DNA from: Tubulanus polymorphus | Taxonomy: Eukaryota > Animalia > Nemertea | Direction of reading: 5' to 3' | DNA: 64,000 nucleotides | Assembly (NCBI RefSeq): GCF_964204645.1 | Contig: NC_134031.1 | Coordinates: 20,467,910 to 20,531,909, forward strand | Program-made: the position numbers and the translations under genes | Notes under the pieces: generated by a model | Told to the model about the DNA's origin: nothing | The model's database searches: none | Seen by the model: the letters and a program-made list of their open reading frames with translations, nothing else | Shown here: in pieces, positions 196 through 32,153 of the stretch | Numbering within the stretch: position 1 is the first letter of the stretch | How the letters are laid out: the number at the start of each line of letters is the position of its first letter

Positions 196-3100
196 GCGCG
201 AGTTTGAAGATAATTCAGTTGCTGCAGCATTTCGAACATCTGACATCACCTCTCGCACAAGCCGTCGAAATGTTCGTCAATGAATACGGATCTAAGGCAA
301 TCGTGGGTGAAATAATGAGGTAATCATCATTTGTAAAACTCGTCGATTCCTTGAATCCTCTTTAATTTTGAGAAATTACTCTAACTCTTAGAAACTCCTT
401 AAATTTTGGGAAAGTCTTTTGAAAATTTTCAAAAATAAATGTCCATGTTTTTCGTGAAAGGTTTGCTCGTTAACTGCTGCGGAACATTTAAGAAAGTAAA
501 CAAGCAAAAATCAACCATCTTTCTTTTTTAAAGGGAAATAGGTCGAATGGATGCTCGTGATTTAGTACGTGATAATACTGCTACTCACGCGTTTTCCCTC
601 TTCCTCACCGAGTTGGCCGAAAAAATTCCACACGTGATGCTGCCAAATTTGAGCGTGCTCGTTCATTTCCTCGACGACGAGGTAGGAATATCTAGGGAGA
701 TAAATGACTGGTTCATTGTTACGGATTTAGGCGAGGGGGTTATTATTATGAAGGACCAGGAAGGGATGATTGATACACAGTTACAGATGTAGTCTTGGGG
801 GTAAAAATACCAATGTCACTTCTCTCTAGAGAGAGATGACTGATACACAGTAACCGATATAGGCAATTGGTAAATATATCAATATTGCTTGGTGCCTGAA
901 CTTTTATGATGCTCAAGGATAACAGAATTAATCATTTAACGATGATGATCTTTTCGCTTGATTTGAGGAGGATTGTCAAACAAAAATGCTTGGCAAAAAT
1001 TAAATGGTGATTGAATTAAATTGAACTATTAAAGCGAAATGGTTTTTTCTTACAGCCGTATACAATGCGAAATTGTGTATTGACTATGATGGGTGATATT
1101 CTAATAATTACATTGAGCGGTGAAAACTTGGACGAAAAACAGAAATCAACTCGAGATAGTTTCCTCGATCAGCTAGAAGTAAGTACGTAGCACGAGCAAT
1201 TAACCATCGTTCGAAGAAACGTTTTTAATATTTTTGTTTTTTTCATTAGGAACATATTCACGATGTACACGCATTCGTCAGGGCTAAAGTTATACAAGTT
1301 TGGCTGCGCATTGTTGAAAATAAGGTAAACAACAATAGGACAAATGTGGCAATTAAGTGTTTTTGGATTTAAACGGGTTTGGATTAAATGGTTTTGGATT
1401 AAACAGGTTTGACCGTGAACTGCTAATTTTCCACTCTCGTTTCAACTCACTATATCGAACGTGTTATTTTAGGCGTTACCCCTGACCCGTCAAGAGGACG
1501 TCGTTGATATGATAATCGGTCGTCTGGAAGATACGTCGAGTCAAGTTCGTAAATACGCGATACAGTTCGTTCGTACTTTACTAGAGAGTAACCCATTCGC
1601 GGCGAAGGTATGAAATAATAGATATTTACAATCAAATTCAATAACAAGTTCACTGCTAAATACGAGATATCCTGGTACAAGGCATCATGTAACTGATCCT
1701 TCTTATTCACTATTCAATATTATACAATGAGAAATTTTCTTATCCTTCAAGTGTTAATCCTAGATAATATAGTTATAGATGTAAAAACTTGTTCAATGCG
1801 ATGATGTTTTGCAATTCAAGTAAACAATGTTTCGTGCATTTTCCTATATTTTCAGTTGTCCCTTGAGGAACTAAAAGAAAATTACGAAAAAGAAAAGGCG
1901 AAATTGAAGGAAATGGTTCCTGACCGAAATAGCGATGTATTCACAGGTAAAAAGCAGTTACAAAATAAATATTCAGTATCTTTATTTGTTGAATATTTCG
2001 AAATTTTCAAGTTAAAACCAGGATAGAAAATCCACAATGAAGAGTGTACTGTGTACAACTGAACCGAGGGCATGTTCTGTTAGCCTTCTTATTACTGATG
2101 TCAACACAGCAAAGTTCATATCTTTTCAATAAGCTTAAGGGTTAATTTTTCTAACTTCAGAAAATGCGAAAGAAATAGAAAATGAATGGGATCGAGTTTA
2201 CCAGAAATTAGGAGGTAAAATACGCCAGTATTTGGATACGGAAGAGGAGATTGATCCATCATTCATCGATGATACGGATGATGCTAAAAGGTATTTAGAA
2301 AAAAAAGATGTTAAACCTGTTTAAATTTGAAAATGTTTATTCGCATATTCAGTTATAACTTGTTCGTTATATCGTTTTGTAAATAGCGTTGTGGATAGGT
2401 TGAGAAAAATGATCAAAGAAGAACAACTTGAAGATGTCGTACCGCTACTAATGGCTGCTAAAGACGCCTTCCCAGATTCAGAGATATTAAAGGATTCATT
2501 GGCCGATGAGTAAGTTTGTCCATCTTTTGGACGCCAATTCAGAAATGCCATTTGCCATTTGTTATATAAGGTTTATAATATGTTTACGACTATGTTTTCA
2601 TCAGTGTCAGTTTGTTTGTAGATCTCAGAGTCAGGAAATGGATGAAATAACCCCTGCAAATCGCGTTCTGCAAACCTTCAAGAATATCTATCTTGCATCA
2701 GGTAAAGAAAGAGAGACATAACGTGGCCAAATTCTTTATAACGCGCAGTTTTTCATTGGTCCTAACGGTGGCATTATGAAGGACATTTACTGTATTTCAA
2801 AAATTAGTCAATTGGTTTATCATCGTTACTATGGTATTTGAGGATCCCTAGGGCTAACATAAATACTCTGTCTTCTGAAACTGGTTCTTGTTGATCTGTG
2901 GTTATTACAAGTATTCAAATCAAAATATCATAAATAAACTGTTGAATTGCTGAATATTTTTGTAGCGGTGAATTTGGAGCTATTGGCTAATCCATCGTCT
3001 CAGGCAGCTAGTCAAGATGATTCAACGGTGAATGAAGTCGCGAAACAACAGTTTTTGGTGCAGTATCTAAAGGTTTGTCAGTCACAAGGTTTCAATTTTG

Positions 3101-6100
3101 GATTCTCAAAGTTAAATATGATCTCCTCTGATTTGAGGTTATCGAGTGATTTCTAATGATATCAGAGATTGTTCAGTCCTATTATCAAATTGATGGTGTA
3201 AGGTCCGATACAGATGTTATTCAACCTATTTCAGGGGTCAATATGTAGGATTATGGAATTTATTTTTGGATGTCCAGTAGATGTTTTCATAGTCAAAGAG
3301 TGGTTAGACTACTGAACTCAGTTCCACTGTTGTTAAATAAGATTTGACATGAGCACTGTAAAACATCGATGAAAGTGAACTAATTCGATTCATCCTCCTG
3401 GGATGGGGATTAGAACCTGATGGCATCGCTGCACTCAGCCACGATACGAAACCTGTACCGTGGCGAGTCTCGATGCCATCAGCTTCGAATAAAAGTGGCC
3501 ATTGAAAAGTGGTTGAATGATCTGAAAAGTAATATATGACGAATATGTTTTCTAGGATTCTATGGTTTTCGCGGGGCAGATACAGAAAGCGTTGTCGGTT
3601 ATCTGTCAGTTGCTCGGCTCGAAGGTTCAGACCGATGTGCTCGAAGCGGTCGAGTTTTTCGTCGCGGCGTTTGATTTTGGCGTGTTGAACGCGATGCGAG
3701 GAGTTCGCGCGATGTTCACGCTCGTTTATAGCAAAGAGAATAAAGTGAAAGACTCTGTAGTGAACGCTTATAAACGACTGTATCTTACACCGGCTGATGG
3801 TAACGCGCGGTAAGTTAGAAACATTATTAGTTTGTATTAACCCTTTCAGTGCGGTGTATTAATCCGTGATTAACTTTGTTAGTACACCGAATTGCAGTGT
3901 ACTGGGTGTATCAGGGAGCCACTGAGCTAGAAAAAAACCTGTGAAGTCAGAAAAGAAAATTTCACATATCTTACCAAAAACCTGGAAATCGGTACATGAT
4001 TCAACATTTTGAGGCAGAAAGTGGCCACCCTGATAGATCTAATTAGTAGTTTACTGGTATGCCCTACTGAACTTTGTACTGGGGTGGAATTTTTTCATAA
4101 TTTTCAAATTATCTCTTGCACTATAGGAACCTGCATTGAAAAGGGAAACTTTTCCGACTTCTTCTATATTCTGTAATGTTTTCATTTCTATAGAGCACAA
4201 GCGATGGCAGTTGTGAATAATTTAACAGCTCTGACGATCGGAGCGTGTAAAAAAGAGCTTACTTCAATGGAAGAATTGGTATGTCTCTAGTTTCAATTTG
4301 ATGTAAAACTAATTTGAAAATGGAAATTCGAGGTTGTCTGTTTTGCCTATAACATTATCAAATGTGGTAGTTGGACTAAGACAATAAGTAATGTCTATTA
4401 CAACTTGTTTGCACAGACATCGGGTGCTATAACTCGGCACATATCGAAGGATTATCAAAACATTTTCTCGTACTCAAATCTAACAGTTTGGATATTTTAG
4501 TTCAGCTGTGTGCTGATGATTTTAAGAGCGTTATCGGGTATTTACTGAGTTATGGCGCCTGATGTTGGTGCAACAAGTTGAAATAGTCGTTGATCTCCTC
4601 GCTGGGATACGACGTACATGTTATAGTAGCTATTGTAATTCCTATTCATACTGTTATTGTAGGTTTGTGAGTACGTAAAGAATGGAGATATCACCGAACC
4701 GGTTATAAAACTTCTGTGGGAAAGATTTACGATGAAAATATCGAATACGACCTCGGAAGAAAGTCGAGCTGCTCTCGTTCTTCTAGGAATGGCTGCCAAG
4801 TAAGTTCTTTTCGAATTGCCTACATTGCGATTTTCGTGATTTTGCGATGAAAAGATCGTCGATTTATAAGATATTTTTGCTTTATCTACCGGTTTACATT
4901 TGAAAAATGTTCTCGTATATGAATATCTCGCTGATTTTCTTTTTTTAAGAGCTGAGGAGAACATTGCGCGTAGTAATATCGACATCCTTGTATCGGAGGG
5001 ACTAGGGCCGCGAGCTCGTCAGGATCTGATGTTAGCTCGTGACGCTTGTATCATGCTATTGCGAATAGGCGGATCAGTGAAGGTAAGTAACACCTGTTCA
5101 GTTTTCGACCTCTCTCCCTTGCTTTATAACAAATCGAGAAAATTCTCTATATGAAGAACGGTAAATCTACACTAAAGCGCTGTTGAAATCATCTTTGATA
5201 GGTTTATAAATCAGTTATTTACAGTAACTAGAACTGAGAACTCAATCAATGCTCTGTTTAACATGGTTTGTTATATACATTTTTAGCCCAAAGCTGGTCA
5301 AACTGTTGAACCGTTCAGATTATCAGAATCTCATTCCATATTCACCGAATTACAGAATCTACTTTACGAAGGTAACATCCATTTTATTACTTGCCTTTCA
5401 TACATTTTAGTTTAAAGGACTTGTCTTCCACTTCCCCCGAGCCTCTGGTAACTCATTCGGATATTTCAGAATGATAAGATCTGTGGAAAGACCTTGAATT
5501 TGTTTGCCTATACAGCTGGATATGAACTACAATATAGCAGACAGTCTTCTGCTAATCAATAAACGCCTATATACCACTATGCTGTACTAGCACACTTGCA
5601 CTTTACAAGCCAATCGAAATATCAGTCTCTATAGGAAGTGAACTGGTTGAAATTAATGACGAATCATATACGTTGTATTTGTAGGATTTTTCATAAAGGA
5701 TGATAATCATTGGGTACCGATGGCTGAACAGGCCGTGAATGTGATCTATAAACTAGCCGAACATCCTGACACAATCTGCGGCAACGTCATCAAACGACTT
5801 CTTAAACAAGTTTTCACTGATTCTTCAACATCCGATGAACGTGAAGTGAATGCTGTCATGGAGGTCAACAATAGTGATTCGCAAGGTTTGTCGTTAGTAG
5901 AAATCTGAAATACGGCTGAGACGTGTTAGTGAAATAAAGTGTAATCCTTATTAACTTAAGATAAATGAAAAGATCCCACGATAGAATGAAACCACAAAGT
6001 TTCGGCCATTAACTAACAGGTGGTAATTCTAATCTATGTGATCATCAGAACCATTTCCATTTACACAATTTTGAACATTAAATGTCCATCATGGAAACTA

Positions 6101-9100
6101 TTTATTTTCATCGGGGTCTGTCCATCCGTCATGAATGATTGAAAGTCTAAATAACAAGTAATGCTTTTGCAATTATTCAGGAGTTGAAATAGTGTATTGA
6201 CTCTGTTCATGAATTCATAAAGGTTCAGCCGGTTCTGTAATCAGCAGTCAGGTGTCGGCCGTCTCTGACAGTCAAGATTTTCCCAAAGACATCCAATGCT
6301 CGACGGTGTATTTGACGAAGTTGTTATCGATGGCCGGACACATGGCATTACGTCAGCTGATACACCTCGACGTCGCCGTGTTCGGTGAATTCAAACGCAG
6401 ACGCGTCATACAAGACGAAGAAAACGAAAAGGGAAAAGCGAACAAGAAAAAGAGTAAATTAACGAGCGTCAGTGATACGGTTTCTAAAAGTAGACAGGTC
6501 GGTGCAAAATAGACAAAAACTGTTTGACTTTATAGATTTATAGTTTCTATTAAAACGTGGTCATCATCGAAATAATTGTCAAAAAATAAGCCACAGATGA
6601 TGATTCAACTAATCTTATTGAACCCAAAAGTCGAAAGCCAAGTTTCTTTTTTGTGTCAGTTTTTCAGAGTTTGAAATATTTCGCCCATATTTGGAAAGTT
6701 GAATTTTACTCTTTAGAATTGAGATTTGATGATATTTGAAATTTCATTATACGTATTAGTTTATTCATTAAGATTTGTTTTATTTATTTCTTTTCGCTTT
6801 TCAATCAAACAGGAAAGTACGACGACAGTTGAAGCGATTGAGGATGAACTCGGATTAGCTGGTGGAGCTGAGGAAGATGTGGAAGCTGAATACATCAGAA
6901 AAATCTGCGAGGAAGACCTCATTTCAGGTATTTGGCGTACATTTGTTTAAAACATGTCATGATTCAGCCATATGTTTAGTCATATGGGAAGCCACACATG
7001 TATATGGGATCCGATTTGAGAATATGTCACTGAGACATCAGAGGGTTTTCATAGAACTAAAGTTGCTTTATGCCCAAATTTTAGTTCCATCGGTATTGGA
7101 GGATAGTGAGTTCTTCAGTGGCTTCTCACTGATCATAGAGAAACCACCTACCTACCGGTACTCATAATATCCTCAGTGGTGTTCAGTGTCTTAAAAAACA
7201 TCACTCAGTTGTAGCTTATATCCCATTTTTCTGTCCTACACTTTGGATTATCAAATTTGTTGAAAATTATCTCTTTTCGTATTTTAAACTAGGTGACAAT
7301 TTGTTGGCACTGTTCCAGCCGATTATTGTAGCTGTATGCAGTAATCCGAGTAAATACTCCGATCCCGATTTACAATCATCGGCCGCTTTGGCTCTCGCTA
7401 AATTCATGTTAGTCAGGTGAGTTACGTGGGCGATAAAGATCGATTAACGGTGGCCACTGACCTGAAAATCCTTGAAAACTCGGGGAATTAGATAAATCTT
7501 TAAAAAAAATCAGGGAATTTGACAAATTTTACCAAAAACCTGGAAAAGTCAGGGAATTCAGATACTGTTATTTACTTTCATTATCGGTACATGATTCAAT
7601 GTAAAATTTTATATCTAGAAATTTCTCTGAATTTTGTGTAGTAGTCGCATGGAAAAAATTAGGGAAAACTCGGGGGATTTGTAAACGGGCGGAAAGTGGC
7701 GCCACCCTGTCTTACCATCGATTACTGATAGATTTTTATATTTACCCTATATGATGATTATGACTTGTGATTATTGAATTTCTCATCTGAATTTAGTTCG
7801 GAGTTTTGTGATTCACAGTTGCAACTGCTGTTCACTATCCTGGATAAATCACCGAGCCCGGTCATTAGAGCTAATACAATCATAGCCCTCGGTGATTTGA
7901 CGTTCAGATTTCCAAACAACATCGAACCATGGACCGGACATTTATACGCAAGGTAAAAACAATGTCAATGTCAAATGGTTGTGTATGGTGAGTTTGAACT
8001 TCAGTGAACTACTGCGCTTCAGATCACAAACGAGGTCCGCTGTGTTACGTCAGGCAAATAGACGCGTGAAAATCCATGTCAAATTGAAGTAGTTTTAGCG
8101 AGTTTGTTGTAACTGTTTATTTGTGTAGGTTGCAAGATGATTCGATTCTCGTAAGAAGAAGTACATTGACTGTGTTAACTCATTTGATTCTCAACGACAT
8201 GGTCAAAGTGAAAGGGCAAATCAGCGAAATGGCTAAATGTATCATGGACGATGATCCGCGAATTAGTGGCCTGGCGAAATTATTCTTCCAGGAACTAGCG
8301 AGAAAGGTACAGGAATTTATCACTTAAATTCATCATGACCAGGACCTCGGGACGCCTGGTTCCATTTGGCTTAGATTTGACTCTCGATTTAAAACATCAG
8401 GAGCAACCGATGACTTTTGAATTGGAGCCAATACAGTAATAATCGTGATTAAGAGTTGAATCTGGTTTACGTAAATTAATCATTTAAATCTGTATTTTAG
8501 GGTAACGCGGTCTACAATAACTTGCCCGATATGATCAGTCGTCTGTCCGATCCGGATATCGGAGTCTCCGAAGAATTCTTCCAAACTATCATGAAGTACG
8601 TAGAATTGTGTAAATCAATTCTTATAAAAGCGAGCAAAATTTTAAGAAGTGCTACGGTTTATATTTGATTTGCGATTACAGCATTTCCAGATGTAAGCCA
8701 TGCGCTTTATCGCGTGACCCACACCATACTGCCGGTCAATATTTAGTAAATCTCCTGATTATCTTTCGTTGCTATTTACGACAAGTCTCCAGCGCTGACG
8801 GCGAACAAACTCTGACGTCTGCAGTATCTACAGGACTTCTTTCAACTGTCACTGATTTACTGCGTTAATAAGTATAGAATATGGTTTCCGTTTATTTTCA
8901 GGCTTTTATTCGCCTACATTCAGAAGGACAAACAAAGCGAAAGTTTAGTGGAAAAACTCTGTCATCGTTTCAAAGCTACCAGGTACAGACAAAACATTGA
9001 TGTCATGGCTTAGTCAGACATGGCTCATGGCTTGAATCTAAAAGTAGTATCTAGGTTTGAATGAAGCCTGTTCGCTGCCAACAATGAGTTATTTTGATGC

Positions 9101-11244
9101 TGATCCTTCTTATTGACAGGGAATAACACACTTTCTGATTGGCTGGCAATGTGAACAAACTCTGCATCATTTGCCATGCTCATTGGTCAATTTTGCACAA
9201 TGGCTGACTTGTTACGATAGCTCTATTGCCAACTACGAGATAACTCGTATTAGCAACTAGGAAGAAATGTGGCAGCCAATGTGTTAAATCTTAAGAATTG
9301 CCTTAAGTTGTTAGATTGGCAAGAGAAACAAGGAGCATTTGAATCTAAAGCCTTGACATTGCGACTAGCACTGGGTCAATCTGGATGTTAATCTACCAGA
9401 TTTTCTAATTATTATTGAACGTTGTGTTTCAGGAGCGAACGCCAGGCGCGAGATCTAGCGTTGTGCTTATCGATGTTAAACTACTCGGAACGCAGTGTTC
9501 GGAAAATTCAAGAGAACTTCCCGTGTTTCGCGGATAAACTTCACGACGAACAAGTGTTCAATTACTTCCAAACTATCGTAGCCAGCAGCAAAAAATCAGC
9601 TAAAGTTGATACAAAGGTATTTCATTATTCAAATAGTAGAAGCACTTCAAGTTTATGCAAAGTATTCGCAGTTTTTTTCAAATTTCAAATTATCTCCAGC
9701 ACTTTTTGGTGAAAATTAGTCAGCACTGAAAGGGTTATTTATCTCTGTATTAATGTTTTATTTGTTCTCTCACAACAGACGATGATTGAAGAATTGGAAG
9801 CTCGTTTGGAGGAATGTCACTTGAAGGGCGCTGATGCCGAACTCGTAGCTCAGAAAGCGAGTAAGGCTTCGGCAGCAGCTAAAGCGCGGAAACGCTCGCC
9901 TCGAAAGTCTCCAAAAACACCCGGTGAGTTCGTAAATAAATGTGGAATATTAGTAACTAACGATACACCACATTGTTGCCGCATTGAGACTCTGTAACGT
10001 GATGCCTGTTAATGAATGCCCCGGGTGGACATTTCCAGCACTTTCGGGTATTGATTGTCAGCACTGAAAGGGTTCAGGCATTGAATGTCTCAGTTGGTCC
10101 AGATACAGGATGGCCAATGACCTGGAAAACCTTGAAAACTAGGGAATCGGAAAAATCTATAAAAAAATCAGAGAAACTTTTTGTCAAAATTAACCAGAAT
10201 CCTGAAAAATTCTTATGGCTAGTTTTATAGACTGGTATTACTTTGAACCCGGGGGCTACAACTATTTCTGATTCTCTCTGGAATATTTCGCAATGACACG
10301 GAAAAATCAGGGAATTTGTATATTGGTAGAAAGTGGCGCCACCCTGATATGCACATACAGTATAGAAAGGCGTTTTCACGATGTTTTGTAGGTAAAACCC
10401 GGTCGCCGCCGATAGTGCCTCGTGCGACGCGACGTAAAACAACGACGACAGCCGTGAAAAAGAAACCATTCGAACTGAGTGACGATGATGATGATCTGAT
10501 TCTACCGACGAGATCGGTACCACGACCAAAACGTCAGACCGGTAAATCACGAGCACCGGTCATCGAATCTGACGATGACGACGACAATGATGACGATGAT
10601 GATGATGAAGATGATGAAGTTGCTGTTACTCGGCGAAGCGTTAAACCGAATAACCGACGCGGCAAAATTCGACAAAAGATCATCATGGATTCAGATGATG
10701 ATGAGTTGTTTGAAATGGACAGGTTTGTATTATAATTTATAACTCTAAAGTGAGTTGTATAGCCAAGACTAAAGCTGTCTACATCTACCACTGTTTGAGA
10801 GTAGTTTGTGCTCTTAGATAATTCAATTACAAATGTTCTCTCAAAACCAGAACAATTTCTTGTTCATTTTCAATTAAACTTGACTATTTTCCATATCAAA
10901 TGACTCATTTTTGCTGAAAACTACTACAATCTGAGATATCATCTGGTCTGCTAAATGGCAGATTTAAGACCATTTCGCTCTGAAAGCCAATCTCTCAAGC
11001 CATATTGTGATTAAGACCAATTTTTGACACAAGTCTCAATTGTGTCATGGGTTATTTTATAGATTAGCAGGGGCTGCAGTTGCTCAATTGTTGGTTAAAG
11101 ATAACTGGCAGATAGATTCCATAGTGACAATGAAATTTTAACTAGTTTTACCGGTTTTAGCTATCGGCACCTCATTTCAGTATCGACTGATCTACGCTCA
11201 GAATTATTTCACAATGTGTTATTTTGCTGTATATTTTTAGCTGA
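196..11244 (+). CDS. NCAPD2: Condensin complex subunit 1 (CAP-D2), multi-exon, 5' end outside the window
   Basis: Many GT-AG bounded exons (e.g. 196-319, 534-681, 3556-3809, 7797-7952, 8130-8306) encode HEAT/Cnd1-type motifs: IRANTIIALGDLTFRFPNNIEPWT, LTHLILNDMVKVKGQISEMA, NAVYNNLPDMISRLSDP, KDKQSESLVEKLCHRF, followed by a basic then acidic low-complexity tail. The stop is either at 10735 (unspliced) or at 11244 via GAC AG|gtttgt (10722) spliced to tttttag|C TGA (11241); gtttgt donors are used elsewhere in this gene. AATAAA near 11526. Confidence 0.95.
3404..3490 (-). mobile_element. tRNA-derived SINE-like remnant, related copy at ~44674-44725 (+)
   Basis: Shared segment cgatgccatcaggttc(g/t)(a/g)atccc with a B-box-like GGTTCGAnTCC. 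A further B-box-like motif (ggggattcgaaccc) lies at ~32622. Confidence 0.4.
3912..4032. mobile_element. Non-autonomous DNA transposon (MITE) with CAGGG(T)GGCCAC...GTGGCCACCCTG termini, copy 1
   Basis: Inverted termini; internal ccaaaaacctggaaa is shared with the copies at 7449-7709 and 10106-10346. CAGGG ends suggest a hAT-like element. Confidence 0.65.
7449..7709. mobile_element. MITE, CAGGG family, copy 2 (NCAPD2 intron)
   Basis: ggtggccactgacctgaaaatccttgaaaactc...aaagtggcgccaccctg, with repeated cagggaatt subterminal motifs. Confidence 0.7.
10106..10346. mobile_element. MITE, CAGGG family, copy 3 (NCAPD2 intron)
   Basis: caggatggccaatgacctggaaaaccttgaaaactagggaat...aaagtggcgccaccctg. 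Confidence 0.7.
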
Positions 11245-12358: not shown

Positions 12359-15300
12359 ATGGCAGAATCAAATCCACCCGCAATCACCCACACGAAAAAG
12401 AAGAAAAGATTCCGATTGAAATTTTGGAAAAAGAAAAAACGTAGGGATTTAGAGCCAAATGAGACATTAACCACAGAATCAGGTATGTGCTTTATAGGTG
12501 TGATGCGGGTTAGAGAGTTTAATATCTTTAGCTACCGTTAGTATGGCTTGAAATCGATGATACATGTCAAAAGTTGATTTAATTTTTCTGTTTACGGAAA
12601 TTGATTCTCAAGTTTTAGTTTCCGTAAACGGCTGGAAATCCAACTTGAGCATAGTTTACTGTACCATTTGTAACATTTGATATACATTGCATAATAATTC
12701 ATTAAAGGAGAGTAATTTTCTCAGATTGGCTAATTCATTTCCATACAGAATATTCTGGTTGTTTTAGAACATCTTTCGCTATCGCAACAAACTTGTCCTG
12801 TTGTTCTGTAAATAAAATAATTACAAATTGTAATGTCTGACCTTGTCTAATCGATGTGTTTAGAAATTTGGATTGTTACGTGGGTGATTCTGAGAATTGT
12901 GTGCGTATGAAAAGTTTCTACCTTTTCACATTTTTTACCTTTGTAAGTTGGAGCAGAAACATAAACAAATCCCAGGAAACTACCAATCCGTCCTCCTGGG
13001 TATTTCACTTGATCTTGTGGGTCTAACCAAAGATGTACTTCCGGATGGCGTTTCAAAACTCCAAACTCTATCAGGTTTTCAACTGTGTCCGTAGCAAAAG
13101 TTGTAAGATATCCTACCATGAATTTTGTGCCATTTGGGGTAGGTGCCTTCGGTACTATCCCTTGACTGACTTTCAACAGCGCCTCAAAGCAGTTTCCATC
13201 ATCGAGGCAAGCTCTAAACATTGGTATACATTCAGTGGCAATCCTATGATTCACCTCTATTATTTTATGGCTTCCATCTTTCATAATCACCATTTCCAAA
13301 AAAACGAATTGATTATTGAATCCATAGTCAATCATTCTCTGAACGACAATGTCAAAGGTTTTCCAGATTTCTTCCTGGGTATCTTTTTGTACTCTTGACG
13401 GGTATGACAGGCTCGACATCTCCACAGGGTCAGTTTCCCAAAAGTTAGCGTCAGCTATTGCCCATTTGATAATCTGACCACGGGCAACTAGTCCAGTTAC
13501 AACTAGGAACATATCGAAGTCTTCGAATTCTTCCACTATCAGTGCATTTTCAGGACAAGGTGCTCCAACTTTCGACAGAAATTCTTCATCGAATCGATGC
13601 CATTTCTTCTCTACTTTAAGACTCTCGTAAGCTCCCAGATTCTCCCGCAAAGCATTTTCACATTTGATCTTCTTCGAACCGACGGAATGTGTTCCCGTGC
13701 ACGGCTTCACAAAACAAGGAAATCCCACTTGGTTGAGGACATCATGTATTTCAGTAGGCGAAGCATCATACCTCAATAATCGATAATTAATTCCACCTTG
13801 TTCTTTAGTGAAATACAAACGAGTGTAATATTTATGTAAAGCGATGGCTACTGATTTCAATGATGGTCCAGGTATATGAGGTAACCTTTCACAGATTGCA
13901 GCGCTGATTATAGCAGCGATATCGCGTAGTCCTAACACGCCAGTTATTTGTTCATTCTTCACTATATCGATACATCTCTCTGTGAAATCAAATATATCTT
14001 CATCGGGTGAACGGATTATATTCATAAACTCGTAGCATTCCTTCACTTCTTCTCTCAATTCCTGAATTCCGATTTCTGAAGAATGCACTTCCATCGGTTC
14101 GTAGCAAATCATTGCGATCTTTGACTTTGTTTTAGACATGATTATTTTTCCGCCAAAGAAATCAGTGATCGTTGATATTTTTTTCTTACTTTGAGCAGTT
14201 TATGATTTACACTAGTGCTGAGTTGAGTGCTGTGAACTTGAATGATCATGGAGTAATGAATTGACAAATGATTATTCTGATCTGAACTTGTATTCGTGTT
14301 GTTTTGTTCAAATTGTGCCAACTGAGGTCATGGCTATATGTCATACACAGATACATATTCGACAAATATACATTAGAAGATTATAGAAGCGATATCGCGT
14401 AGTCCTAACACGCCAGTTATTTGTTCATTCTTCACTATAACGATACATCTCTCTGTGAAATCAAATATATCTACATCCGGTGAACGGATTATATTCATAA
14501 ACTCATAACATTCCTTCACTTCTTCTTTTAAACTACCGATGCAGATTTTTGATGCTCCGACATCCATCGACTCGTTCGAGATAATTGCAATTTTTGTTTT
14601 GGACATGGTAATTTTAACCCTTAACCACTTCTACGAGTGGTCACTATTAGATTTGAGTCAGTAAGGTGACTGCGTTCAGTCTGACAACTCCAATGTTGCA
14701 CAAGGTGAAGCCTCAGTTATTGTATTTAATCCATTGTATATTAATGTGGCATTTAGCGAATAAAACAGGCCTCAGTCAATAGCTGCAATATGAAAGGTCT
14801 GGGTCATTTGAAAATGCACGTTAGAGATCAATGAAAACGAGGCAATAAAAATGTATAAAAGTTTGTTGTTAAAAAGGAGATAAATTTAGAAATATTATAT
14901 ACTTCTTTGTAATACCTACGACAAGTGATGTCACATTATTTCTTGGAAGCCAAATTCAATAATTCTGAGAAATAAAGAGTAGAAGTAAAATTTAAGGAAG
15001 GGGTTGTAATTAAGACATATAAGATAGAAATCCATTTTACCCACACTGCACTATTATATTTATAGATAACTCTGTTAGCTGCTGTTAGTTAATGTCCATT
15101 CAGTTGACTATTCTTAATGACTTCTTACCCACAGATTTATGGCACAGACACTTGGAAATTATGGAAGTCGAGCTTTTAAAATCTCATAATCTAACCTATA
15201 GAATTCTATGCCTAAAACAATACAGGATTAGCCTGTCTGTTGATACTTTCAAACATAATCTTAAAACCTTCCTTTTTCGAAGAACATAGGAATCCGAATG

Positions 15301-18300
15301 GTGATTGTATTTTGAATATCTATTTATTATCTCAAATGTTTTTAATGAGTGTAATATTTGTTTAATACAAGTGAATTATTTATGTAAAGCGATGGCTACT
15401 GATTTCAATGATGGTCCAGGTATATGAGGTAACCTTTCACAGATTGCAGAGCTGATTATAGCAGCGATATCGCGCAGTCCTAACACGCCAGTTATTTGTT
15501 CATTCTTCACTATATCGATACATCTCTCTGTGAAATCAAATATATCTTCATCGGGTGAACGGATTATATTCATAAACTCATAATATTCCTTTACTTCTTC
15601 TTTTAAACTACCGATGCAGATTTTTGATGCTCCGACATCGGTGTTTATGGAAATTAATTCTCAAGTTGTAGTTTCCGTAAATGGCTGGAAATCCAACTTG
15701 AGCATAGTTTACTGTACCATTTGTAACATTTGATATACATTGCATAATAATTCATTAAAGGAGAGTAATTTTCTCAGATTGGCTAATTCATTTCCATACA
15801 GAATATTCTGGTTGTTTTAGAACATCTTTCGCTATCGCAACAAACTTGTCCTGTTGATCTGTAAATAAAATAATTACAAATATGTAATGTCTGACCTTGT
15901 CTAATTGATGTGTTTAGAAATTTGGATTGTTACGTGGGTGATTCTGAGAATTGTGTGCGTACGAAAAGTTTCTACCTTTTCACATTTTTTACCTTTGTAA
16001 CTTGGAGCAGAAACATAAACAAATCCCAGGAAACTACCAATCCGTCCTCCTGGGTATTTCACTTGATCTTGTGGGTCTAACCAAAGATGTACTTCCGGAT
16101 GGCGTTTCAAAACTCCAAACTCTATCAGGTTTTCAACTGTGTCCGTAGCAAAAGTTGTAAGATATCCTACCATGAATTTTGTGCCATTTGGGGTAGGTGC
16201 CTTCGGTACTATCCCTTGACTGACTTTTAACAGCGCCTCAAAGCAGTTTCCATCATCGAGGCAAGCTCTAAACATTGGTATACATTCAGTGGCAATCCTA
16301 TGATTCACCTCTATTATTTTATGGCTTCCATCATTCATAATCACCATCTCCAAAAATACAAATTGATTATTGAATCCATAGTCAATCACTCTCTGAACGA
16401 CAATGTCAAAGGTTTTCCAGATTTCTTCCTGGGTATCTTTCTGTACTCTTGACGGGTATGACAGGCTCGACATCACTACAGGGTCGGTTTCCCAAAAGTT
16501 AACATCAGTTATCGCCCATTTAATAATCTGACCATGGGCAACTAGTCCAGTTACAATTAGGAACATATCGAAGTCTTCGAATTCTTCCACTATCAGTGCA
16601 TTTTCAGGACAAGGTGCTCCGACTTTCGACAGAAATCCTTCATCGAATCGATGCCATTTCTTCTCTACTTTAAGACTCTCGTAAGCTCCCAGATTCTCCC
16701 GCAAAGCATTTTCACATTCGATCTTCTTCGAACCGACGGAATGTGTTCCCGTGCACGGCTTCACAAAACAAGGAAATCCCACTTGGTTGAGGACATCGTG
16801 TATTTGAGTAGGTGAAGCATCATACCTCAATAATCGATAATTAATTCCACCTTGTTCTTTAGTGAAATACAAACGAGTGTAATATTTATGTAAAGCGATG
16901 GCTACTGATTTCAATGATGGTCCAGGTATATGAGGTATCCTTTCACAGATTGCAGCGCTGATTATAGCAGCGATATCGCGTAGTCCTAACACGCCAGTTA
17001 TTTGTTCATTCTTCACTATATCGATACATCTCTCTGTGAAATCAAATATATCTTCATCTGGTGAACGGATTATATTCATAAACTCATAACATTCCTTTAC
17101 TTCTTCTTTTAAACTACCGATGCAGATTTTTGATGCTCCGACATCCATCGACTCGTTCGAGATAATTGCAATTTTTGTTTTAGACATGATAATTTTAACC
17201 CTTAACCGCTTCTACGAGTGGTCACAATTAGATTTGAGTCAGTAAGGTGACTGCGTTCAGTCTGGTGAAGCCTCGGTTATTGTATTTAATCCATTGTATA
17301 TTAATGTGGCATTTAGCGAATGAAACAGGCCTCAGTCAATAGCTGCAATATGAAAGGTCTGGGTCATTTGAAAATGCACGTTAGAGATCAATGAAAACGA
17401 GTTTACAAAAATGTACAAAAGTTTGTTGTTAAAAAGGAGATAAATTTTGAAATATTATATACTTCTTTGTAATACCTACGACAAGCGACGTAACATTTTT
17501 AATAAATCAAGGCAGTACATTATGTAGCACTATCTAGCAAAGTTAGCTCCCAGCCGTCCAACCTCATCAAATCTATTATGAGTTTTTCGTCATTATTACA
17601 TGTATCATCATTTTCGTTTTGATCTCTTGCCACTTGGTGAGAAATTTACATTGGATTGTTACAAGTAATATTCTATTGTCCCATGTACTCATATAAACCA
17701 GGTTCCAGCGTATGTAATGTAGTTTGAAGCAGGGATTTAAAGCTAAATTTCATTTTGATTTTGAACTGTTAAAAACCCCTCGATGCATTAGAATAGAAAT
17801 TGTCGGCGAAAATTTAGAAAAGAAAATCAATATTGATTGATTGACTGGAAACAGCCAGCTGGGCAAACAGAGCTAGGAAAATACACTGTATTGTATTTAT
17901 TCTATAGATATGTGTTCAACGATACCGAGTGCGGTAAACACCAGTAACAACAGTGACGATTGTGTCGGCAAATACCTCGCTGAAAACATCGCTAACATGC
18001 AGAAAGAAGCTGAAATCATCGCCACGCATCAGCAACAGAATTCATCTTCAAATAATGCGCAGGTAATTTAGCCCCGAGTAATTGTGCTGTAGCGGTTATT
18101 TGACAGTTCAAGTTAAGAGGTTAATAATCAGATTTGAATGTTGAAACTAGTTCAGATACATCTACAGAAGGTTTCGTCATGGAAAGACTTACACATACAA
18201 TAAAATCTTCCTAGATAATATTTAATTTGTGTTTATTTGTAGGTGTGCGATCAATCTAGTAATTCTCAACCATCTCTATTGAGAGATATAGTATCTGCTA

Positions 18301-19539
18301 TTTGCGACTTGGTGACATTCCGAAATAGTGCATCCCGAAATTTCCAACAACAAACTCCAGTCATCTCGTGTAAGTATTTGTTTCCACATGAAGTTTGATT
18401 ACATATTTCTCTTATCGGATGCGTTTTCAAGTGGAAATTATTATCTAATAAACTTGGTCTTACTGGGCGGGTATCAGTCAACTGGGTAAACTTGGTCTTA
18501 CTGGGTGGGTATCAGTCAACTGGGTAAACTTGGTCTTACTGGGTGGGTACCAGTCAACTGGGTAAACTTGGTCTTACTGGGTGGGTATCAGTCAACTGGG
18601 TAAATTTGGTCTTACTGGCTGGGTACCAGTCAACTGGGTAAACTTGGTCTTACTGGGTGGGTACCAGTCAACTGGGTAAACTTGGTCTTACTGGGCGGGT
18701 ATCAGTCAACTGGGTAAACTTGGTCTTACTGGGCGGGTATCAGTCAACTGGGTAAACTTAGTCTTACTGGGCGGGTATCAGTCAACTGGGTAAACTTGGT
18801 CTTACTGGGTGGGTATCAGTCAACTGGGTAAACTTGGTCTTACTGGGTGGGTATCAGTCAACTGGGTAAACTTGGTATTACTGGGTGGGTATCAGTCAAC
18901 TGGATAAACTTGGTATTACTGGGTGGGTATCAGTCAACTGGGTAAACTTGGTCTTACTGGGTGGGTATCAGTCAACTGGGTAAACTTGGTCTTACTGGGC
19001 GGGTATCAGTCAACTGGGTAAACTTGGTCTTTCTGGGCGGGTATCAGTCAACTGGGTAAACTTGGTCTTACTGGGCGGGTATCAGTCAACTGGGTAAACT
19101 TGGTCTTACTGGGCGGGTATCAGTCAACTGGGTAAACTTGGTCTTACTGGGCGGGTATCAGTCAACTGGGTAAACTTGGTCTTACTGGGTGGGTATCAGT
19201 CAACAGGGTAAACTTGGCTCTAAACCATGAATTATTTTACGCCTGGAATTTATTTGTTAAACTTCATATTTCCCTGATTCTGAACTCAGTAAACCGCTCC
19301 AGCCTCCAGTCGGTAAATTTTCGTTTTGAAAACCTCTTGTTTTACTACTGAGTAAGGTTTTAATAGCAAACAAAATTTGGAACCCAAATGAGACATTTCA
19401 TTTAGCTGTAATGTAATTTTGGATATGACTTTATTCTGTTTCAGATGTCGTATTATGGATTTTACTGGCTCCATTTTATCTGATATTCTACATATTCAAA
19501 GGGCTTGGAAAATCCCGTCGCCTCTTAAAAAACAAATGA
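12359..19539 (+). CDS. Orphan ~166-aa protein with a Lys/Arg-rich N-terminus and a C-terminal transmembrane (tail) anchor; 4 exons
   Basis: Exons 12359-12482, 17908-18062, 18243-18369 and 19445-19539 are all GT-AG bounded, phase-compatible (1,0,1) and stop-free: MAESNPPAITHTKKKKRFRLKFWKKKKRR...ES/DMCSTIPS...NNAQ/VCDQ...PVIS/YVVLWILLAPFYLIFYIFKGLGKSRRLLKNK*. Confidence 0.65.
12735..14139 (-). CDS. ATP-grasp ligase copy A (L-amino-acid ligase / carnosine-synthase-like fold), 423 aa, 2 exons
   Basis: Motifs HKYYTR, FPCFVKPCTGTHSVGSKKI, IVEEF and LEM...IIEVNHR. Exon 1 is 14139-12939 (TACAAAG|gtaaaa); exon 2 is 12805-12735 (tttacag|AACAACAG), giving the C-terminus EQQDKFVAIAKDVLKQPEYSVWK*. Confidence 0.88.
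14373..14606 (-). pseudogene. Truncated ATP-grasp copy (5' fragment of B type, with ~320 bp of duplicated upstream region)
   Basis: Near-identical to the copy B N-terminus, with homology ending shortly after LRDIA. Upstream 14607-~14930 matches 17188-~17490. Confidence 0.85.
15376..15639 (-). pseudogene. Internal ATP-grasp fragment lacking the start codon and ending at ALHK*
   Basis: Homology runs from DVGASK to ALHK followed by TAA. The fragment directly abuts the 3' flank of copy B (gtttatggaaattaattctcaag, which matches ~12590). Confidence 0.85.
15788..17187 (-). CDS. ATP-grasp ligase copy B, 421 aa, 2 exons
   Basis: Same motifs as copy A. Exon 1 is 17187-15993 and exon 2 is 15858-15788 (DQQDKFVAIAKDVLKQPEYSVWK*); the intron position is identical. 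Confidence 0.88.
18449..19217. repeat. 38-bp minisatellite, 20 copies plus a partial unit (intronic)
   Basis: Unit taaacttggtcttactgggYgggtaYcagtcaactggg in direct tandem without spacers. Confidence 0.97.
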
Positions 19540-20812: not shown

Positions 20813-21862
20813 ATGGAAAAACAAATGCTGAAATCTCGACTGCCTCCGATCCCTGCGGGAGATATAAGATCGACGAGGCATCGTCAAATAGATTACACCC
20901 CGGTCGATTGGAAGGGTTATTTCGACCAACAAGACGAAATAACCGTCGGCAATGACCGATTTCACGTTTATAAAAGCGGTAAGTCGGGTCCGGTGTTGTT
21001 ATTTCTACACGGCGGTGGATTCTCCGGCCTCACGTGGGCGTTACTCTCGACGGCGATTCAACAATCGATCGAATGTCGTTGCGTGGCGCTCGATTTCAGA
21101 GCTCACGGCGAGAGTAAATGCGCCGACGAAAATGATTTGAGCACGGACACCCTAACGAACGACGTCGGGAATGTCGTTACGGCTTTATTCGGCGACGAGG
21201 CTCCTCCGCCGGTCGTATTGATCGGGCATAGTATGGGCGGGGCTATCGGCGTCGACGTGGCCCATCGAGGTATTATACCTTCGTTAACGGCTCTGGTCGT
21301 CATCGACGTCGTCGAGGGCACCGCGTGCGAAGCTCTCGGCAGCATGCGCAGTTTCCTCGGTAACCGGCCGCGAGCGTTCGAGTCGTTGGAACGCGCGATC
21401 GAATGGAGTTTAAAAACCGGACAAATTCGTAACATCGATTCGGCGAAAGTTTCGGTGATCGGACAATTGAAATCAATCGATTCAGGGAGTGATTTTCAAC
21501 AAAGCGTTTCCAACCAATCAAATATAATCGCTGAAGAAACCGAAGAGGAGGCTGCTGCTTCGAACCACGAAGTTCCCGCTCAAACTAATAAATATACTTG
21601 GAGATTAGATCTTATGAAAACAGAACAGTTTTGGAAAGGTTGGTTCACCGGTTTATCGAAGAAGTTTCTCGGCGTGCCGGTTCCGAAAATGTTACTGCTA
21701 GCCGGCGTCGATCGCTTGGACAAAGATCTGACGATCGGTCAAATGCAGGGCAAATTTCAAATGAAAGTTCTTCCGAAATGCGGACATTGTGTACACGAAG
21801 ACGTTCCCGACGAAGTAGCCGAGATTCTAGTGAGCTTTTTAAAGCGGCATAAATTAGTTTAA
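20813..21862 (+). CDS. PPME1: Protein phosphatase methylesterase 1 (PME-1), intronless CDS
   Basis: Alpha/beta hydrolase motifs LHGGGFSGLTW, GHSMGG (Ser), IDVVEGTA (Asp), LLLAGVDRLDKDLTIGQMQGKFQM and CGHCVHED (His). Confidence 0.96.
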   Translation: MEKQMLKSRLPPIPAGDIRSTRHRQIDYTPVDWKGYFDQQDEITVGNDRFHVYKSGKSGPVLLFLHGGGFSGLTWALLSTAIQQSIECRCVALDFRAHGESKCADENDLSTDTLTNDVGNVVTALFGDEAPPPVVLIGHSMGGAIGVDVAHRGIIPSLTALVVIDVVEGTACEALGSMRSFLGNRPRAFESLERAIEWSLKTGQIRNIDSAKVSVIGQLKSIDSGSDFQQSVSNQSNIIAEETEEEAAASNHEVPAQTNKYTWRLDLMKTEQFWKGWFTGLSKKFLGVPVPKMLLLAGVDRLDKDLTIGQMQGKFQMKVLPKCGHCVHEDVPDEVAEILVSFLKRHKLV

Positions 21863-31199: not shown

Positions 31200-32153
31200 T
31201 TATCTAACTGCTGAATTTCTACAGCGGATTTTCATACAGAAATATTCGCGAATTTCTCGTCCAAGTAAAAGATATATGTAGAAATTTACCACATAGTTAC
31301 ACATTTGAAACTGTGCAAATATGTCATATAGAATATATTTAATTTCTTCAGAGATTGGCGTCAATACAGTAAAAGTGGATGGAAGTGTGAACATCGCAAA
31401 TGCGAGCGAAACTGTTACAAGCATTATTGTTGTACGTTTTGATTTCGTTGTTTTCTGATCGGAAGAAACCATTTTTGAACCTCTGAATAACTGAACTATT
31501 ATAACAGAATTTGCTGTTATAATCAAAGATAACGGTATGATATACGCGTGAATGACAAACACGGAAAAAAATTTAATTTGGTCTATCAAAGTATGGTAGC
31601 ATCCGAACGCAGGATCTGCGAAACGAATCGACACCGTGGGCAGAAGAGTGAGAACCACTATATTTACTAGAGAAATTATCAATGTAGCAAATCTTGCGAA
31701 TCTCGGTGTACATATCAAACGAGATGTGAACGGGAAGAGAACAACTGCCACTCGTTCTAGAGATATCGCTATTATTAACCACGAACTATTGACAACTGCA
31801 AACCCCATTACGAATTCATAGATTTGACAACTGATCAGTGAATTCATGATGAATATAGGACCATCTTTAACGTGCAAGAGAATAAACTGTAAAACAGGTA
31901 TCAGCGAATAATTCAAACAGACCGTTGAATCACCGAGAGACAAAACGACAAGATAATTAGCGTAAGATAAACTGCGGAATCTGCGACTTATCATTATCAG
32001 GAAAGTAGCCGAATTTCCGAAGACACCTAACATGAACCAGACGGGCAGAATTACCAATGACACATGAAGGTAGATTCCTGACCTGTTTGCAACAGACATC
32101 AGAATGATGTAACTCCTGTAAGTTCGACCAATTTGAATCTGAGTTGAATTCAT
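31200..32153 (-). CDS. Intronless rhodopsin-class GPCR, FMRFamide/sex-peptide-receptor-like orphan
   Basis: Seven hydrophobic segments: GVFGN (TM1), LSLGD (TM2), ISLERVAVVLFP (TM3), FAMFTLP (TM6), NYVVNFYIY (TM7). Confidence 0.85.
   Translation of the reverse strand: MNSTQIQIGRTYRSYIILMSVANRSGIYLHVSLVILPVWFMLGVFGNSATFLIMISRRFRSLSYANYLVVLSLGDSTVCLNYSLIPVLQFILLHVKDGPIFIMNSLISCQIYEFVMGFAVVNSSWLIIAISLERVAVVLFPFTSRLICTPRFARFATLIISLVNIVVLTLLPTVSIRFADPAFGCYHTLIDQIKFFSVFVIHAYIIPLSLIITANSVIIVQLFRGSKMVSSDQKTTKSKRTTIMLVTVSLAFAMFTLPSTFTVLTPISEEIKYILYDIFAQFQMCNYVVNFYIYLLLGREIREYFCMKIRCRNSAVR

What the first reader, a model, noticed from the sequence alone, without database searches (positions are those of the whole stretch)
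12735..17187. Stand-alone bacterial-type ATP-grasp ligases in an animal genome: candidate horizontally acquired peptide/small-molecule synthetases
Seen in sequence: two intact ~420-aa ATP-grasp genes (KPCTGTHS, EEF, E..IIEVNHR) with nearly the whole CDS in one exon and a single short intron near the C-terminus, while neighbouring housekeeping genes are intron-dense. Established: single-domain ATP-grasp proteins of this size are typical of bacterial L-amino-acid ligases; the main animal example, carnosine synthase, is about twice as long. Inference: the GPSLKSVAIALHKYYTR segment looks more like uncharacterised bacterial ATP-grasp proteins than animal enzymes, suggesting HGT followed by intron gain and expansion, and possibly an undescribed dipeptide or defensive-metabolite pathway.
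Basis: partly seen in the sequence, partly recalled or inferred. Interest (0 to 1): 0.8.

Follow-up and report, generated by a model that had tools for sequence, protein, structure and literature searches.

The report
Ribbon-worm ATP-grasp ligase gene pair
Two intact, recently duplicated genes for bacterial-style ATP-grasp "amino-acid ligase" enzymes sit in a ribbon-worm chromosome. They belong to an old, patchily kept animal family shared with acorn worms and amphioxus, so they are not a recent bacterial import.

Summary
On the minus strand lie two intact ATP-grasp genes of 423 and 421 codons. Each has one long exon, a 133/134-nt phase-1 GT-AG intron and a 23-codon last exon. They are 93% identical, in a 3,054-bp tandem repeat, with two 5' gene relics between them.

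The genome is Tubulanus polymorphus. It holds at least 11 intact paralogs on four chromosomes, all with the same intron and all under purifying selection (dN/dS 0.15-0.29). The fold (pLDDT 94) and a profile search both place the protein nearest the bacterial L-amino-acid ligases BL00235, BacD and RizA.

Recent transfer from bacteria is not supported:
- The nearest relatives are hemichordate and amphioxus genes.
- The intron lies at the identical position and phase in Glandiceps and Ptychodera genes.
- The ML tree nests the nemertean clade among hemichordate genes and separates bacterial sequences (99/95).
- The AU test rejects a nemertean+bacteria clade (p 0.0009).

An ancient, pre-bilaterian transfer stays open. 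Substrate and expression are unknown, because no RNA run was available. First readers of this scan flagged paralogous arrays on other pieces of this genome (four unchecked notes).

The parts
12939..14139 (-). Copy A, exon 1 (codons 1-400 plus the first base of codon 401): the whole three-domain ATP-grasp body
   Evidence: ORF; Pfam PF13535; donor AAAG|GT read; AF2 model with pLDDT 94
12806..12938 (-). Copy A intron, 133 nt, GT-AG, phase 1
   Evidence: Sequence; the spliced product matches the C-termini of P0001/P0002; a DNA contig spans it unspliced (record 1)
12735..12805 (-). Copy A exon 2: last 23 codons (E-QQDKFVAIAKDVLKQPEYSVWK) and the TGA stop
   Evidence: Read; carries the family-wide C-terminal LK.PE.S.W motif
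15993..17187 (-). Copy B, exon 1 (codons 1-398 plus the first base of codon 399)
   Evidence: 93% amino-acid identity to copy A; dN/dS 0.28
15859..15992 (-). Copy B intron, 134 nt, GT-AG, phase 1
   Evidence: Sequence
15788..15858 (-). Copy B exon 2: last 23 codons and the TGA stop
   Evidence: Sequence
14367..14606 (-). Relic of a gene 5' end (about 80 N-terminal codons, one in-frame TAA in the match); 97% identical in DNA to the 5' end of copy B
   Evidence: L015; repeat family D2; ORF 14373..14606
15367..15639 (-). Second relic of a gene 5' part (query residues 17-107, 86% identity, one TAA)
   Evidence: L013; ORF 15376..15573

Best explanation
The locus is a young tandem duplicate (dS about 0.13) of a functional gene. 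It belongs to a family of at least 11 intact cytosolic ATP-grasp carboxylate-amine ligases in Tubulanus polymorphus.

Evolution. The family is animal- or eukaryote-resident and old. Its nearest relatives are hemichordate and amphioxus genes, and its single phase-1 intron is shared with hemichordate genes. The nemertean therefore inherited gene and intron from at least the last common bilaterian ancestor. Most other animal lineages then lost the gene, while Tubulanus expanded it by tandem and dispersed duplication. The wider superfamily is bacterial, so the ultimate origin may be a very old transfer, but that is not shown.

Mechanism (inferred from fold and motifs, not assayed). As in L-amino-acid ligases, ATP bound between the central and C-terminal domains phosphorylates a small carboxylate, probably an amino acid, to an acyl phosphate. 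Inferred contacts are the Lys of FVKP, the VEEF hinge, and Mg2+ on E..E-x-N with the Arg of E-V-N-H-R. The amine of a second small molecule then attacks the acyl phosphate, giving an amide (a dipeptide-like metabolite), ADP and phosphate. Paralog diversity suggests several substrates.
For: Gene structure and integrity.

Own-genome family: 11 intact copies on C7, C9, C3 and C6, plus a 9-stop pseudogene and fragments. All copies end exon 1 at the same ..G|GT site. dN/dS is 0.15-0.29.

Organism: the contig lengths of C9, C3 and C6 equal those of the T. polymorphus records.

Relatives: 468 hits in the deep profile search. The named top hits are Glandiceps, Ptychodera, B. floridae and B. lanceolatum.

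Shared intron: it lies 14 codons before K[KQ]PE, in phase 1, in Tubulanus, in Glandiceps P0003 and in Ptychodera P0011.

Careful PMSF tree:
- Tubulanus is monophyletic (100/97).
- Its sister is Ptychodera P0011 (96/97).
- The group joins the other hemichordate genes (91/81).
- Bacterial-context rows are split off (99/95).

AU test: Tubulanus+bacteria as one clade is rejected, p 0.0009.

Enzyme class:
- AF2 model with pLDDT 94.
- Foldseek top hits BL00235 (TM 0.76) and BacD, then PurT/PurK, with RizA at rank 40.
- Profile against PDB sequences: 4dim 2.5e-25, BacD 7e-17, BL00235 1e-15, RizA 2e-14, with E-x-N-x-R aligned to BacD's E-S-A-A-R.
- The N-terminus starts directly with strand 1, so I see no room for a signal peptide (my reading, no predictor was run).
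Against: - No RNA evidence could be obtained. The only run found is DNA, so expression and splicing of these two copies rest on homology with annotated paralogs.
- No activity, substrate or product is known for any family member.
- Many sequences on the eukaryote side of the tree are unnamed. They are judged eukaryotic only from gene-sparse contexts.
- The deep nodes joining the named animals have only moderate support (88-91 UFBoot, 47-81 SH-aLRT).
- The amphioxus genes examined lack the shared intron: P0012 has 2 exons and P0021 has 8.
- The Pfam LAL-specific domains (LAL_C2, ATPgrasp_N) do not hit.
- The AU group was named after the tree had been seen.
Confidence: 0.7

Rival explanations
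1. One reading: a recent horizontal transfer from a bacterium into the nemertean lineage, followed by intron gain and expansion.
For: The closest characterised enzymes are bacterial LALs. A cyanobacterial homolog (Okeania) scores 2.8e-61 and shares the N- and C-terminal family motifs. Nearly the whole CDS lies in one exon.
Against: Animal hits score better than any bacterial hit (2.8e-80 against 2.8e-61; a rough alien index of about -44). The intron position and phase are identical in two hemichordate genes. The tree and the AU test reject it. GC is not anomalous. Paralogs as low as 37% identical all carry the intron.
Confidence: 0.03
2. One ancient transfer of a bacterial LAL-type gene into an early animal (or earlier eukaryote), then vertical descent with many losses. 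This is compatible with the best explanation and concerns only the ultimate origin.
For: In the unrooted tree the eukaryote-side sequences lie on one side of a 99/95 branch. The wider structural neighbourhood is almost wholly bacterial. Distribution in animals is patchy.
Against: The tree has no root, so direction cannot be told. The family is also rare in the one bacterial phylum surveyed: 3 of 401 cyanobacterial genomes. Transfer from eukaryote to bacterium is therefore equally open for the Okeania clade. The identity of many rows is unknown.
Confidence: 0.4
3. Independent acquisitions by nemerteans, hemichordates and amphioxus from related unsampled donors, for example marine protists or symbionts.
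For: The phyletic pattern is very patchy. Unnamed intron-less relatives are abundant in marine or holobiont assemblies. The amphioxus genes lack the shared intron.
Against: The shared phase-1 intron and the nesting of Tubulanus beside Ptychodera P0011 argue for one ancestral intron-bearing gene in nemerteans and hemichordates.
Confidence: 0.1
4. The enzymes modify proteins or peptides (as TTL, RimK or graspetide-type ATP-grasp enzymes do) rather than joining free small molecules.
For: ATP-grasp enzymes include many protein and peptide ligases. No substrate evidence exists here.
Against: The best sequence-profile and fold matches are free-amino-acid ligases and purine-pathway small-molecule ligases, not TTL, RimK or microviridin-type enzymes. 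The bacterial relatives sit in small-molecule contexts.
Confidence: 0.12

Closest known systems
Bacterial L-amino-acid ligases BL00235 (3vot), BacD/YwfE (3vmm, 3wnz) and RizA (4wd3)
   Same: A stand-alone three-domain ATP-grasp protein of about 410-470 aa. These are the top Foldseek matches (TM 0.76 and 0.71) and profile hits at 1e-14 to 1e-17. The E-x-N-x-R Mg/catalytic loop aligns.
   Different: Sequence identity is only 13-16%. Pfam LAL_C2 and ATPgrasp_N are not detected. The family has its own motifs: GPS.ES...HKYYTR near residue 90 and a C-terminal LK.PE.S.WE tail. It is encoded in animal chromosomes with a spliceosomal intron, and no product is known.
4dim, annotated 'phosphoribosylglycinamide synthetase' of Anaerococcus prevotii (structural-genomics entry)
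   Same: Best sequence-profile hit in the PDB (2.5e-25, two stretches covering most of the protein). It ranks 7th in Foldseek.
   Different: Bacterial and of undefined function. It gives no substrate clue.
Carnosine synthase CARNS1, the known animal dipeptide-forming ATP-grasp enzyme (from general knowledge)
   Same: An animal-encoded ATP-grasp enzyme that joins two small amino compounds.
   Different: It did not appear among the named top hits that were looked up.
Okeania sp. SIO3B5 ATP-grasp gene (cluster of P0007) in a ProX / amino-acid dehydrogenase / SABATH methyltransferase / ATP-grasp operon, next to a SolA-like N-methyl-amino-acid oxidase
   Same: Same family at about 30% identity, aligned end to end with both family motifs.
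   Different: Bacterial operon context with no intron. It lies on the other side of the 99/95 split. The partner genes were not found beside the animal genes. The Methyltransf_7 search of the worm genome was uninformative because the control did not ring.

Membership tests
ATP-grasp superfamily (Pfam PF13535 ATP-grasp_4) | Match to the family model above its curated cut-off | tested here: met
   29.2 and 27.3 bits against a cut-off of 27. This is marginal, but it is backed by the profile search against the PDB.
ATP-grasp superfamily (Pfam PF13535 ATP-grasp_4) | Three-domain fold with the ATP-grasping central and C-terminal domains | tested here: met
   AF2 pLDDT 94, pTM 0.92. At least 500 PDB ATP-grasp matches with E <= 0.001, TM up to 0.76.
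ATP-grasp superfamily (Pfam PF13535 ATP-grasp_4) | Conserved nucleotide and Mg2+ residues (Lys of the ..KP strand, EE hinge, E ... E-x-N-x-R) | tested here: met
   FVKP, VEEF, FLE and IEVNHR are invariant in the four closest sequences and kept in most paralogs. The loop aligns to BacD's. The roles of the residues are inferred from general knowledge of the fold.
L-amino-acid ligases (BacD/RizA/BL00235 type) | Closest sequence and structure similarity among characterised enzymes | tested here: met
   Foldseek ranks 1-5. Profile E-values 1e-14 to 1e-17. PurT and PurK are only slightly weaker.
L-amino-acid ligases (BacD/RizA/BL00235 type) | Pfam LAL_C2 (PF18603) and ATPgrasp_N (PF18130) domains | tested here: not met
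   No hit at E <= 1. These domains appear only in more distant Atlas structural neighbours.
L-amino-acid ligases (BacD/RizA/BL00235 type) | ATP-dependent formation of a dipeptide from unprotected L-amino acids | not testable with these tools
   Needs an enzyme assay.
Recently horizontally acquired bacterial gene in an animal | Nearest relatives are bacterial, not animal (positive alien index, nesting in a bacterial clade) | tested here: not met
   Best animal hit 2.8e-80 against best bacterial hit 2.8e-61. Tree; AU p 0.0009.
Recently horizontally acquired bacterial gene in an animal | Absent from other animal phyla | tested here: not met
   Present in Hemichordata (Glandiceps, Ptychodera) and Cephalochordata (two Branchiostoma species). 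The intron is shared with hemichordates.
Recently horizontally acquired bacterial gene in an animal | True integration in the host chromosome (not contamination) | tested here: met
   The gene lies on a contig of over 20 Mb, between a condensin gene and GPCR genes. It has a spliceosomal intron, 11 paralogs on 4 chromosomes and host-like GC.
Carnosine synthase (CARNS1) | Protein of about 800-950 aa with an N-terminal extension before the ATP-grasp part | tested here: not met
   423 and 421 codons, with the ATP-grasp fold starting at residue 6. CARNS1's length is from general knowledge. No direct sequence comparison was made.

The most novel reading that the evidence does not exclude
Animals once carried their own L-amino-acid-ligase-type enzymes, present in the bilaterian ancestor and now kept only in a few marine lineages (nemerteans, hemichordates, amphioxus and unnamed marine eukaryotes). 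In Tubulanus the family has expanded to about a dozen enzymes that make a set of non-ribosomal dipeptide-like metabolites (osmolytes, mucus or defence compounds) encoded by the animal itself, not by symbionts.
Probability: 0.3. Interest if true: 0.7.

Novelty: new member of a known kind. Interest (0 to 1): 0.45.

Why it matters
Animal-encoded enzymes for small-molecule natural products are few, and each has changed ideas about who makes marine metabolites. Here is an uncharacterised family of LAL-type ligases that is clearly part of animal genomes, under selection and strongly expanded in one ribbon worm. It offers a direct handle on possible dipeptide-like metabolites of nemerteans, acorn worms and amphioxus: express the enzymes and screen amino-acid pairs. 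It is also a worked example in which a 'bacterial-looking, nearly intronless' gene is not a recent transfer. A shared intron and deuterostome orthologs show old residence with massive loss.

Tried and rejected
- Word-index search with the single protein found only two T. polymorphus paralogs. With a 30-row alignment it found six proteins, so it was too insensitive for this family.
With P0007 alone it returned only the Okeania MAG.
- RNA evidence: the one run found (X1) proved to be DNA contigs with no splice joint. Expression is therefore untested.
- Co-duplication of the neighbouring alpha/beta hydrolase with the ligases is rejected, because the hydrolase is single-copy.
- I looked for a conserved partner-gene cluster around the paralogs. 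I found only LINE fragments, a GT31 galactosyltransferase, a GPCR and one MTS-type methyltransferase, with nothing shared between loci.
- The Methyltransf_7 search of the worm genome was uninformative, because the control genomes did not ring either.
- Literature searches could not name the ENA and GCA records that hold the unnamed eukaryote-context homologs. I also found no paper on this family.
- The first large 'quick' tree call gave no answer. It was replaced by FastTree on 109 rows and a careful tree on 70 rows.
- The joined (spliced) protein was never submitted to any tool. Searches and the fold used exon 1 by reference, and the 23-codon exon 2 was read by eye.
Full report
**What is there.** The minus strand of 12,735-17,187 carries two intact genes. 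As raw ORFs they are 12847..14139 (430 aa) and 15901..17187 (428 aa). Each ORF runs past a splice donor.
- In copy A, exon 1 ends at 12939 (AAAG|GTAAAA). A 133-nt intron ends with TTTACAG at 12806. Exon 2 (12805-12735) adds 23 codons and a TGA.
- Copy B has the same layout: exon 1 17187-15993, a 134-nt intron at 15992-15859, and exon 2 at 15858-15788.
- The intron is phase 1 in both copies.
- The spliced C-terminus (K[ED]QQDKFVAIAKDVLKQPEYSVWK) agrees with the C-termini of two annotated Tubulanus polymorphus proteins, P0001 and P0002.
- The products are 423 and 421 residues, 93% identical over exon 1.

All searches and the fold used exon 1 by reference (window:12940-14139:-). The short exon 2 was read by eye.

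The two genes form a tandem repeat with a 3,054-bp period. Two relics of gene 5' ends lie between them, at 14367-14606 and 15367-15639, each with an in-frame stop.

**Whose genome, and is the gene really in it.** The window is C7:20,467,910-20,531,909 of a 268-Mb, 77-contig assembly. Contigs C9, C3 and C6 have exactly the lengths of the records that carry the T. polymorphus proteins P0002, P0001 and P0004. The genome is therefore Tubulanus polymorphus, a palaeonemertean.

The genes are truly integrated:
- Upstream on the + strand lie exons of condensin subunit 1.
- Downstream lie an alpha/beta-hydrolase ORF and two rhodopsin-type GPCR ORFs.
- Gene GC is host-like, 0.405 against 0.384.
- DNA contigs of a public run cover gene, intron and flanks.

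**A lineage-specific expansion.** A six-frame search of the genome finds 11 intact copies (37-100% identical to copy A):
- two on C7;
- three on C9;
- two on C3;
- four on C6.

It also finds a pseudogene with nine stops and several fragments. Every intact copy ends its long exon at the same ..G|GT site, so the intron predates the expansion. Pairwise dN/dS is 0.15-0.29. For copies A and B, dN is 0.036 and dS 0.129. All copies are therefore under purifying selection, and the window pair is a recent duplicate.

**What kind of protein.**
- Pfam ATP-grasp_4 is just above its cut-off, and NCBIfam gives only weak partial hits to Ddl, PurT and CPS-like models.
- With a 71-row alignment, AlphaFold2 gives a confident model (pLDDT 94, pTM 0.92).
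- Foldseek against the PDB ranks the L-amino-acid ligases BL00235 (TM 0.76) and BacD/YwfE first. PurT, PurK and PurD follow, and RizA is at rank 40.
- A profile of the family against PDB sequences gives 4dim at 2.5e-25, BacD at 7e-17, BL00235 at 1e-15 and RizA at 2e-14. The E-x-N-x-R loop aligns to BacD's.
- ESM-Atlas structural neighbours include clusters that carry LAL_C2.
- The canonical ATP-grasp residues are conserved: FVKP, VEEF, FLE and IEVNHR.
- The fold starts at residue 6, so I see no room for a signal peptide (my reading, no predictor was run).

The enzyme class is thus an LAL-like carboxylate-amine ligase. Pfam's LAL-specific accessory domains do not match. The substrate is unknown.

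**Relatives.** The exhaustive profile search found 468 proteins at E <= 0.001.
- Thirty representatives were looked up, and all named eukaryotic ones are animals. They come from Glandiceps talaboti (best, 2.8e-80), Ptychodera flava (several paralogs), Branchiostoma floridae and B. lanceolatum. A later word search added one more B. floridae protein.
- The best bacterial cluster is from the marine cyanobacterium Okeania sp. SIO3B5 (2.8e-61).
- A rough alien index from these profile E-values is about -44, which points to animals.
- Several unnamed sequences from ENA 'metagenome' and NCBI assemblies lie on long, gene-sparse contigs. One has cathepsin and GIMAP/stonustoxin-like neighbours. I read these as eukaryotic, probably host DNA in holobiont samples, but I could not name them.
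- Two lower-scoring clades are in dense bacterial contexts. One is a gene cluster with Ddl, a MurL-type epimerase/FMO fusion, three ATP-grasp genes, PhyH and an MFS pump.
- Among 401 cyanobacterial genomes, only 3 have a match at 1e-15, so the family is sporadic there too.

**The decisive evidence: a shared intron.**
- In Glandiceps P0003 the coding sequence is one long exon plus a 27-codon last exon. The canonical junction is GAAGAG|GTAAAA...TTATAG|AAG, in phase 1.
- In Ptychodera P0011 the junction is ATGAAG|GTAAGT...TTGCAG|AT, in phase 1.
- In both genes, as in all Tubulanus copies, the split codon lies exactly 14 codons before the K[KQ]PE motif.
- Amphioxus P0012 lacks this intron (two exons). 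P0021 has eight exons, none at this site.

**Trees.**
- A FastTree of 109 rows already placed all named animals in one half.
- For the careful tree (IQ-TREE, LG+C20 PMSF, 70 rows, 426 columns) I kept 68 of those rows and added two cyanobacterial loci.
- I left out 41 rows. Most were lower-scoring members of the two bacterial-context clades. The rest were two near-identical C6 copies, and some short rows and some long-branch rows, among them P0023, P0043, P0056, P0077, P0082, P0102, P0111 and P0150.
- Results of the careful tree:
  - The nine Tubulanus genes are monophyletic (100/97).
  - Their sister is Ptychodera P0011 (96/97).
  - They join the other hemichordate genes (91/81).
  - An unnamed eukaryote-context group comes next (88/73).
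  - Amphioxus follows (91/47).
  - All 17 cyanobacterial or bacterial-context rows are split off by a 99/95 branch.
- Forcing Tubulanus and the bacterial rows into one clade costs 46 log-likelihood units (p-AU 0.0009). The group was named after the tree had been seen.
- The tree is unrooted, so the direction of any ancient transfer cannot be read from it.

**Interpretation.** The nemertean genes are not a recent bacterial acquisition.
- Gene and intron go back at least to the common ancestor of nemerteans and hemichordates, that is the bilaterian stem. Wide loss elsewhere and strong expansion in Tubulanus followed.
- The family may ultimately stem from a much older bacterial transfer. I put that at about 0.4.
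- The likely chemistry is ATP-dependent amide formation through an acyl phosphate. This is inferred from fold and motifs only.

**Context clues to function are weak.**
- The Okeania gene sits in an operon with ProX, an amino-acid dehydrogenase and a SABATH-type methyltransferase, beside a SolA-like N-methyl-amino-acid oxidase. This hints at N-methyl amino acid or compatible-solute chemistry.
- The Ptychodera gene has an OCD/mu-crystallin neighbour.
- The Tubulanus paralog loci share no partner gene.

**Earlier notes of this scan.** Four first-reader notes flag paralogous ATP-grasp arrays on other pieces of this genome. They agree with what I found independently on C6 (methyltransferase, GPCR) and C9 (GT31 transferase). 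They are unchecked and add no independent support.

**Verdict.** The enzyme-class reading is supported and the recent-HGT reading is rejected. The find is an uncharacterised, patchily distributed animal family of LAL-type ligases, of moderate interest.

Noticed in passing
window 18335-18980: Tandem array of a 38-bp unit (at least 11 registers of a 266-nt reference, 94-96% identical in the right half), between copy B and the hydrolase gene.
   Followed up: no
window 20813-21862 (+): Single 349-aa ORF for an alpha/beta hydrolase (Abhydrolase_6, 1.9e-27), 3.6 kb from copy B. It is single-copy in the genome, so it was not co-duplicated with the ligases.
   Followed up: partly
window 31200-32153 (-) and 46292-48073 (+): Two long single ORFs for rhodopsin-family GPCRs (7tm_1, 1.3e-13 and 2.4e-48). 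Near-intronless genes are thus common in this region.
   Followed up: no
window about 500-10750 (+): Many short exons of condensin complex subunit 1 (NCAPD2/Ycs4). The exon at 3562-3813 matches Ycs4 residues 549-629 at 1.8e-07.
   Followed up: partly
L020:6757-12607 (ENA contig k141_131822; same arrangement in L021): The cyanobacterial (Okeania-type) homolog is the last gene of a tight operon: ProX-like betaine/proline-binding protein, an amino-acid dehydrogenase (distant ScyB/Glu-DH type), a SABATH-type Methyltransf_7 and the ATP-grasp gene. A SolA-like N-methyl-amino-acid oxidase lies on the opposite strand.
   Followed up: partly
L036:362-11200 (Logan SRR33270626 contig): Bacterial gene cluster with Ddl, a MurL-epimerase/flavin-monooxygenase fusion, three different ATP-grasp_4 genes, a PhyH-like dioxygenase and an MFS exporter. 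It looks like a small-peptide biosynthetic cluster.
   Followed up: no
L034 (G275:C1:2696039-2697244, -): In one cyanobacterial genome the family domain lies inside a 760-aa open frame, a fusion with an unidentified second part.
   Followed up: no
L027:1-2296 (Ptychodera flava CM083797.1): An ornithine cyclodeaminase/mu-crystallin family gene lies about 3.7 kb upstream of the Ptychodera ATP-grasp gene P0011.
   Followed up: no
L042:8538-9377 (-) (G000:C6:4807137-4807976): A 280-aa single ORF for an MTS/HemK-like class I methyltransferase lies between the two pairs of C6 ATP-grasp paralogs. A GPCR ORF and LINE reverse-transcriptase fragments are nearby (L043).
   Followed up: partly
L024:4698-17475 (ENA ERZ25073868 ctg77044): The unnamed eukaryote-like contig that carries homolog P0017 also has two apparently intron-less cathepsin (Peptidase_C1) ORFs. 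It also has a 1,040-aa ORF with Stonustoxin_helical, Thioredoxin_11, fn3 and Septin hits and a weak AIG1 hit. The organism was not identified.
   Followed up: partly
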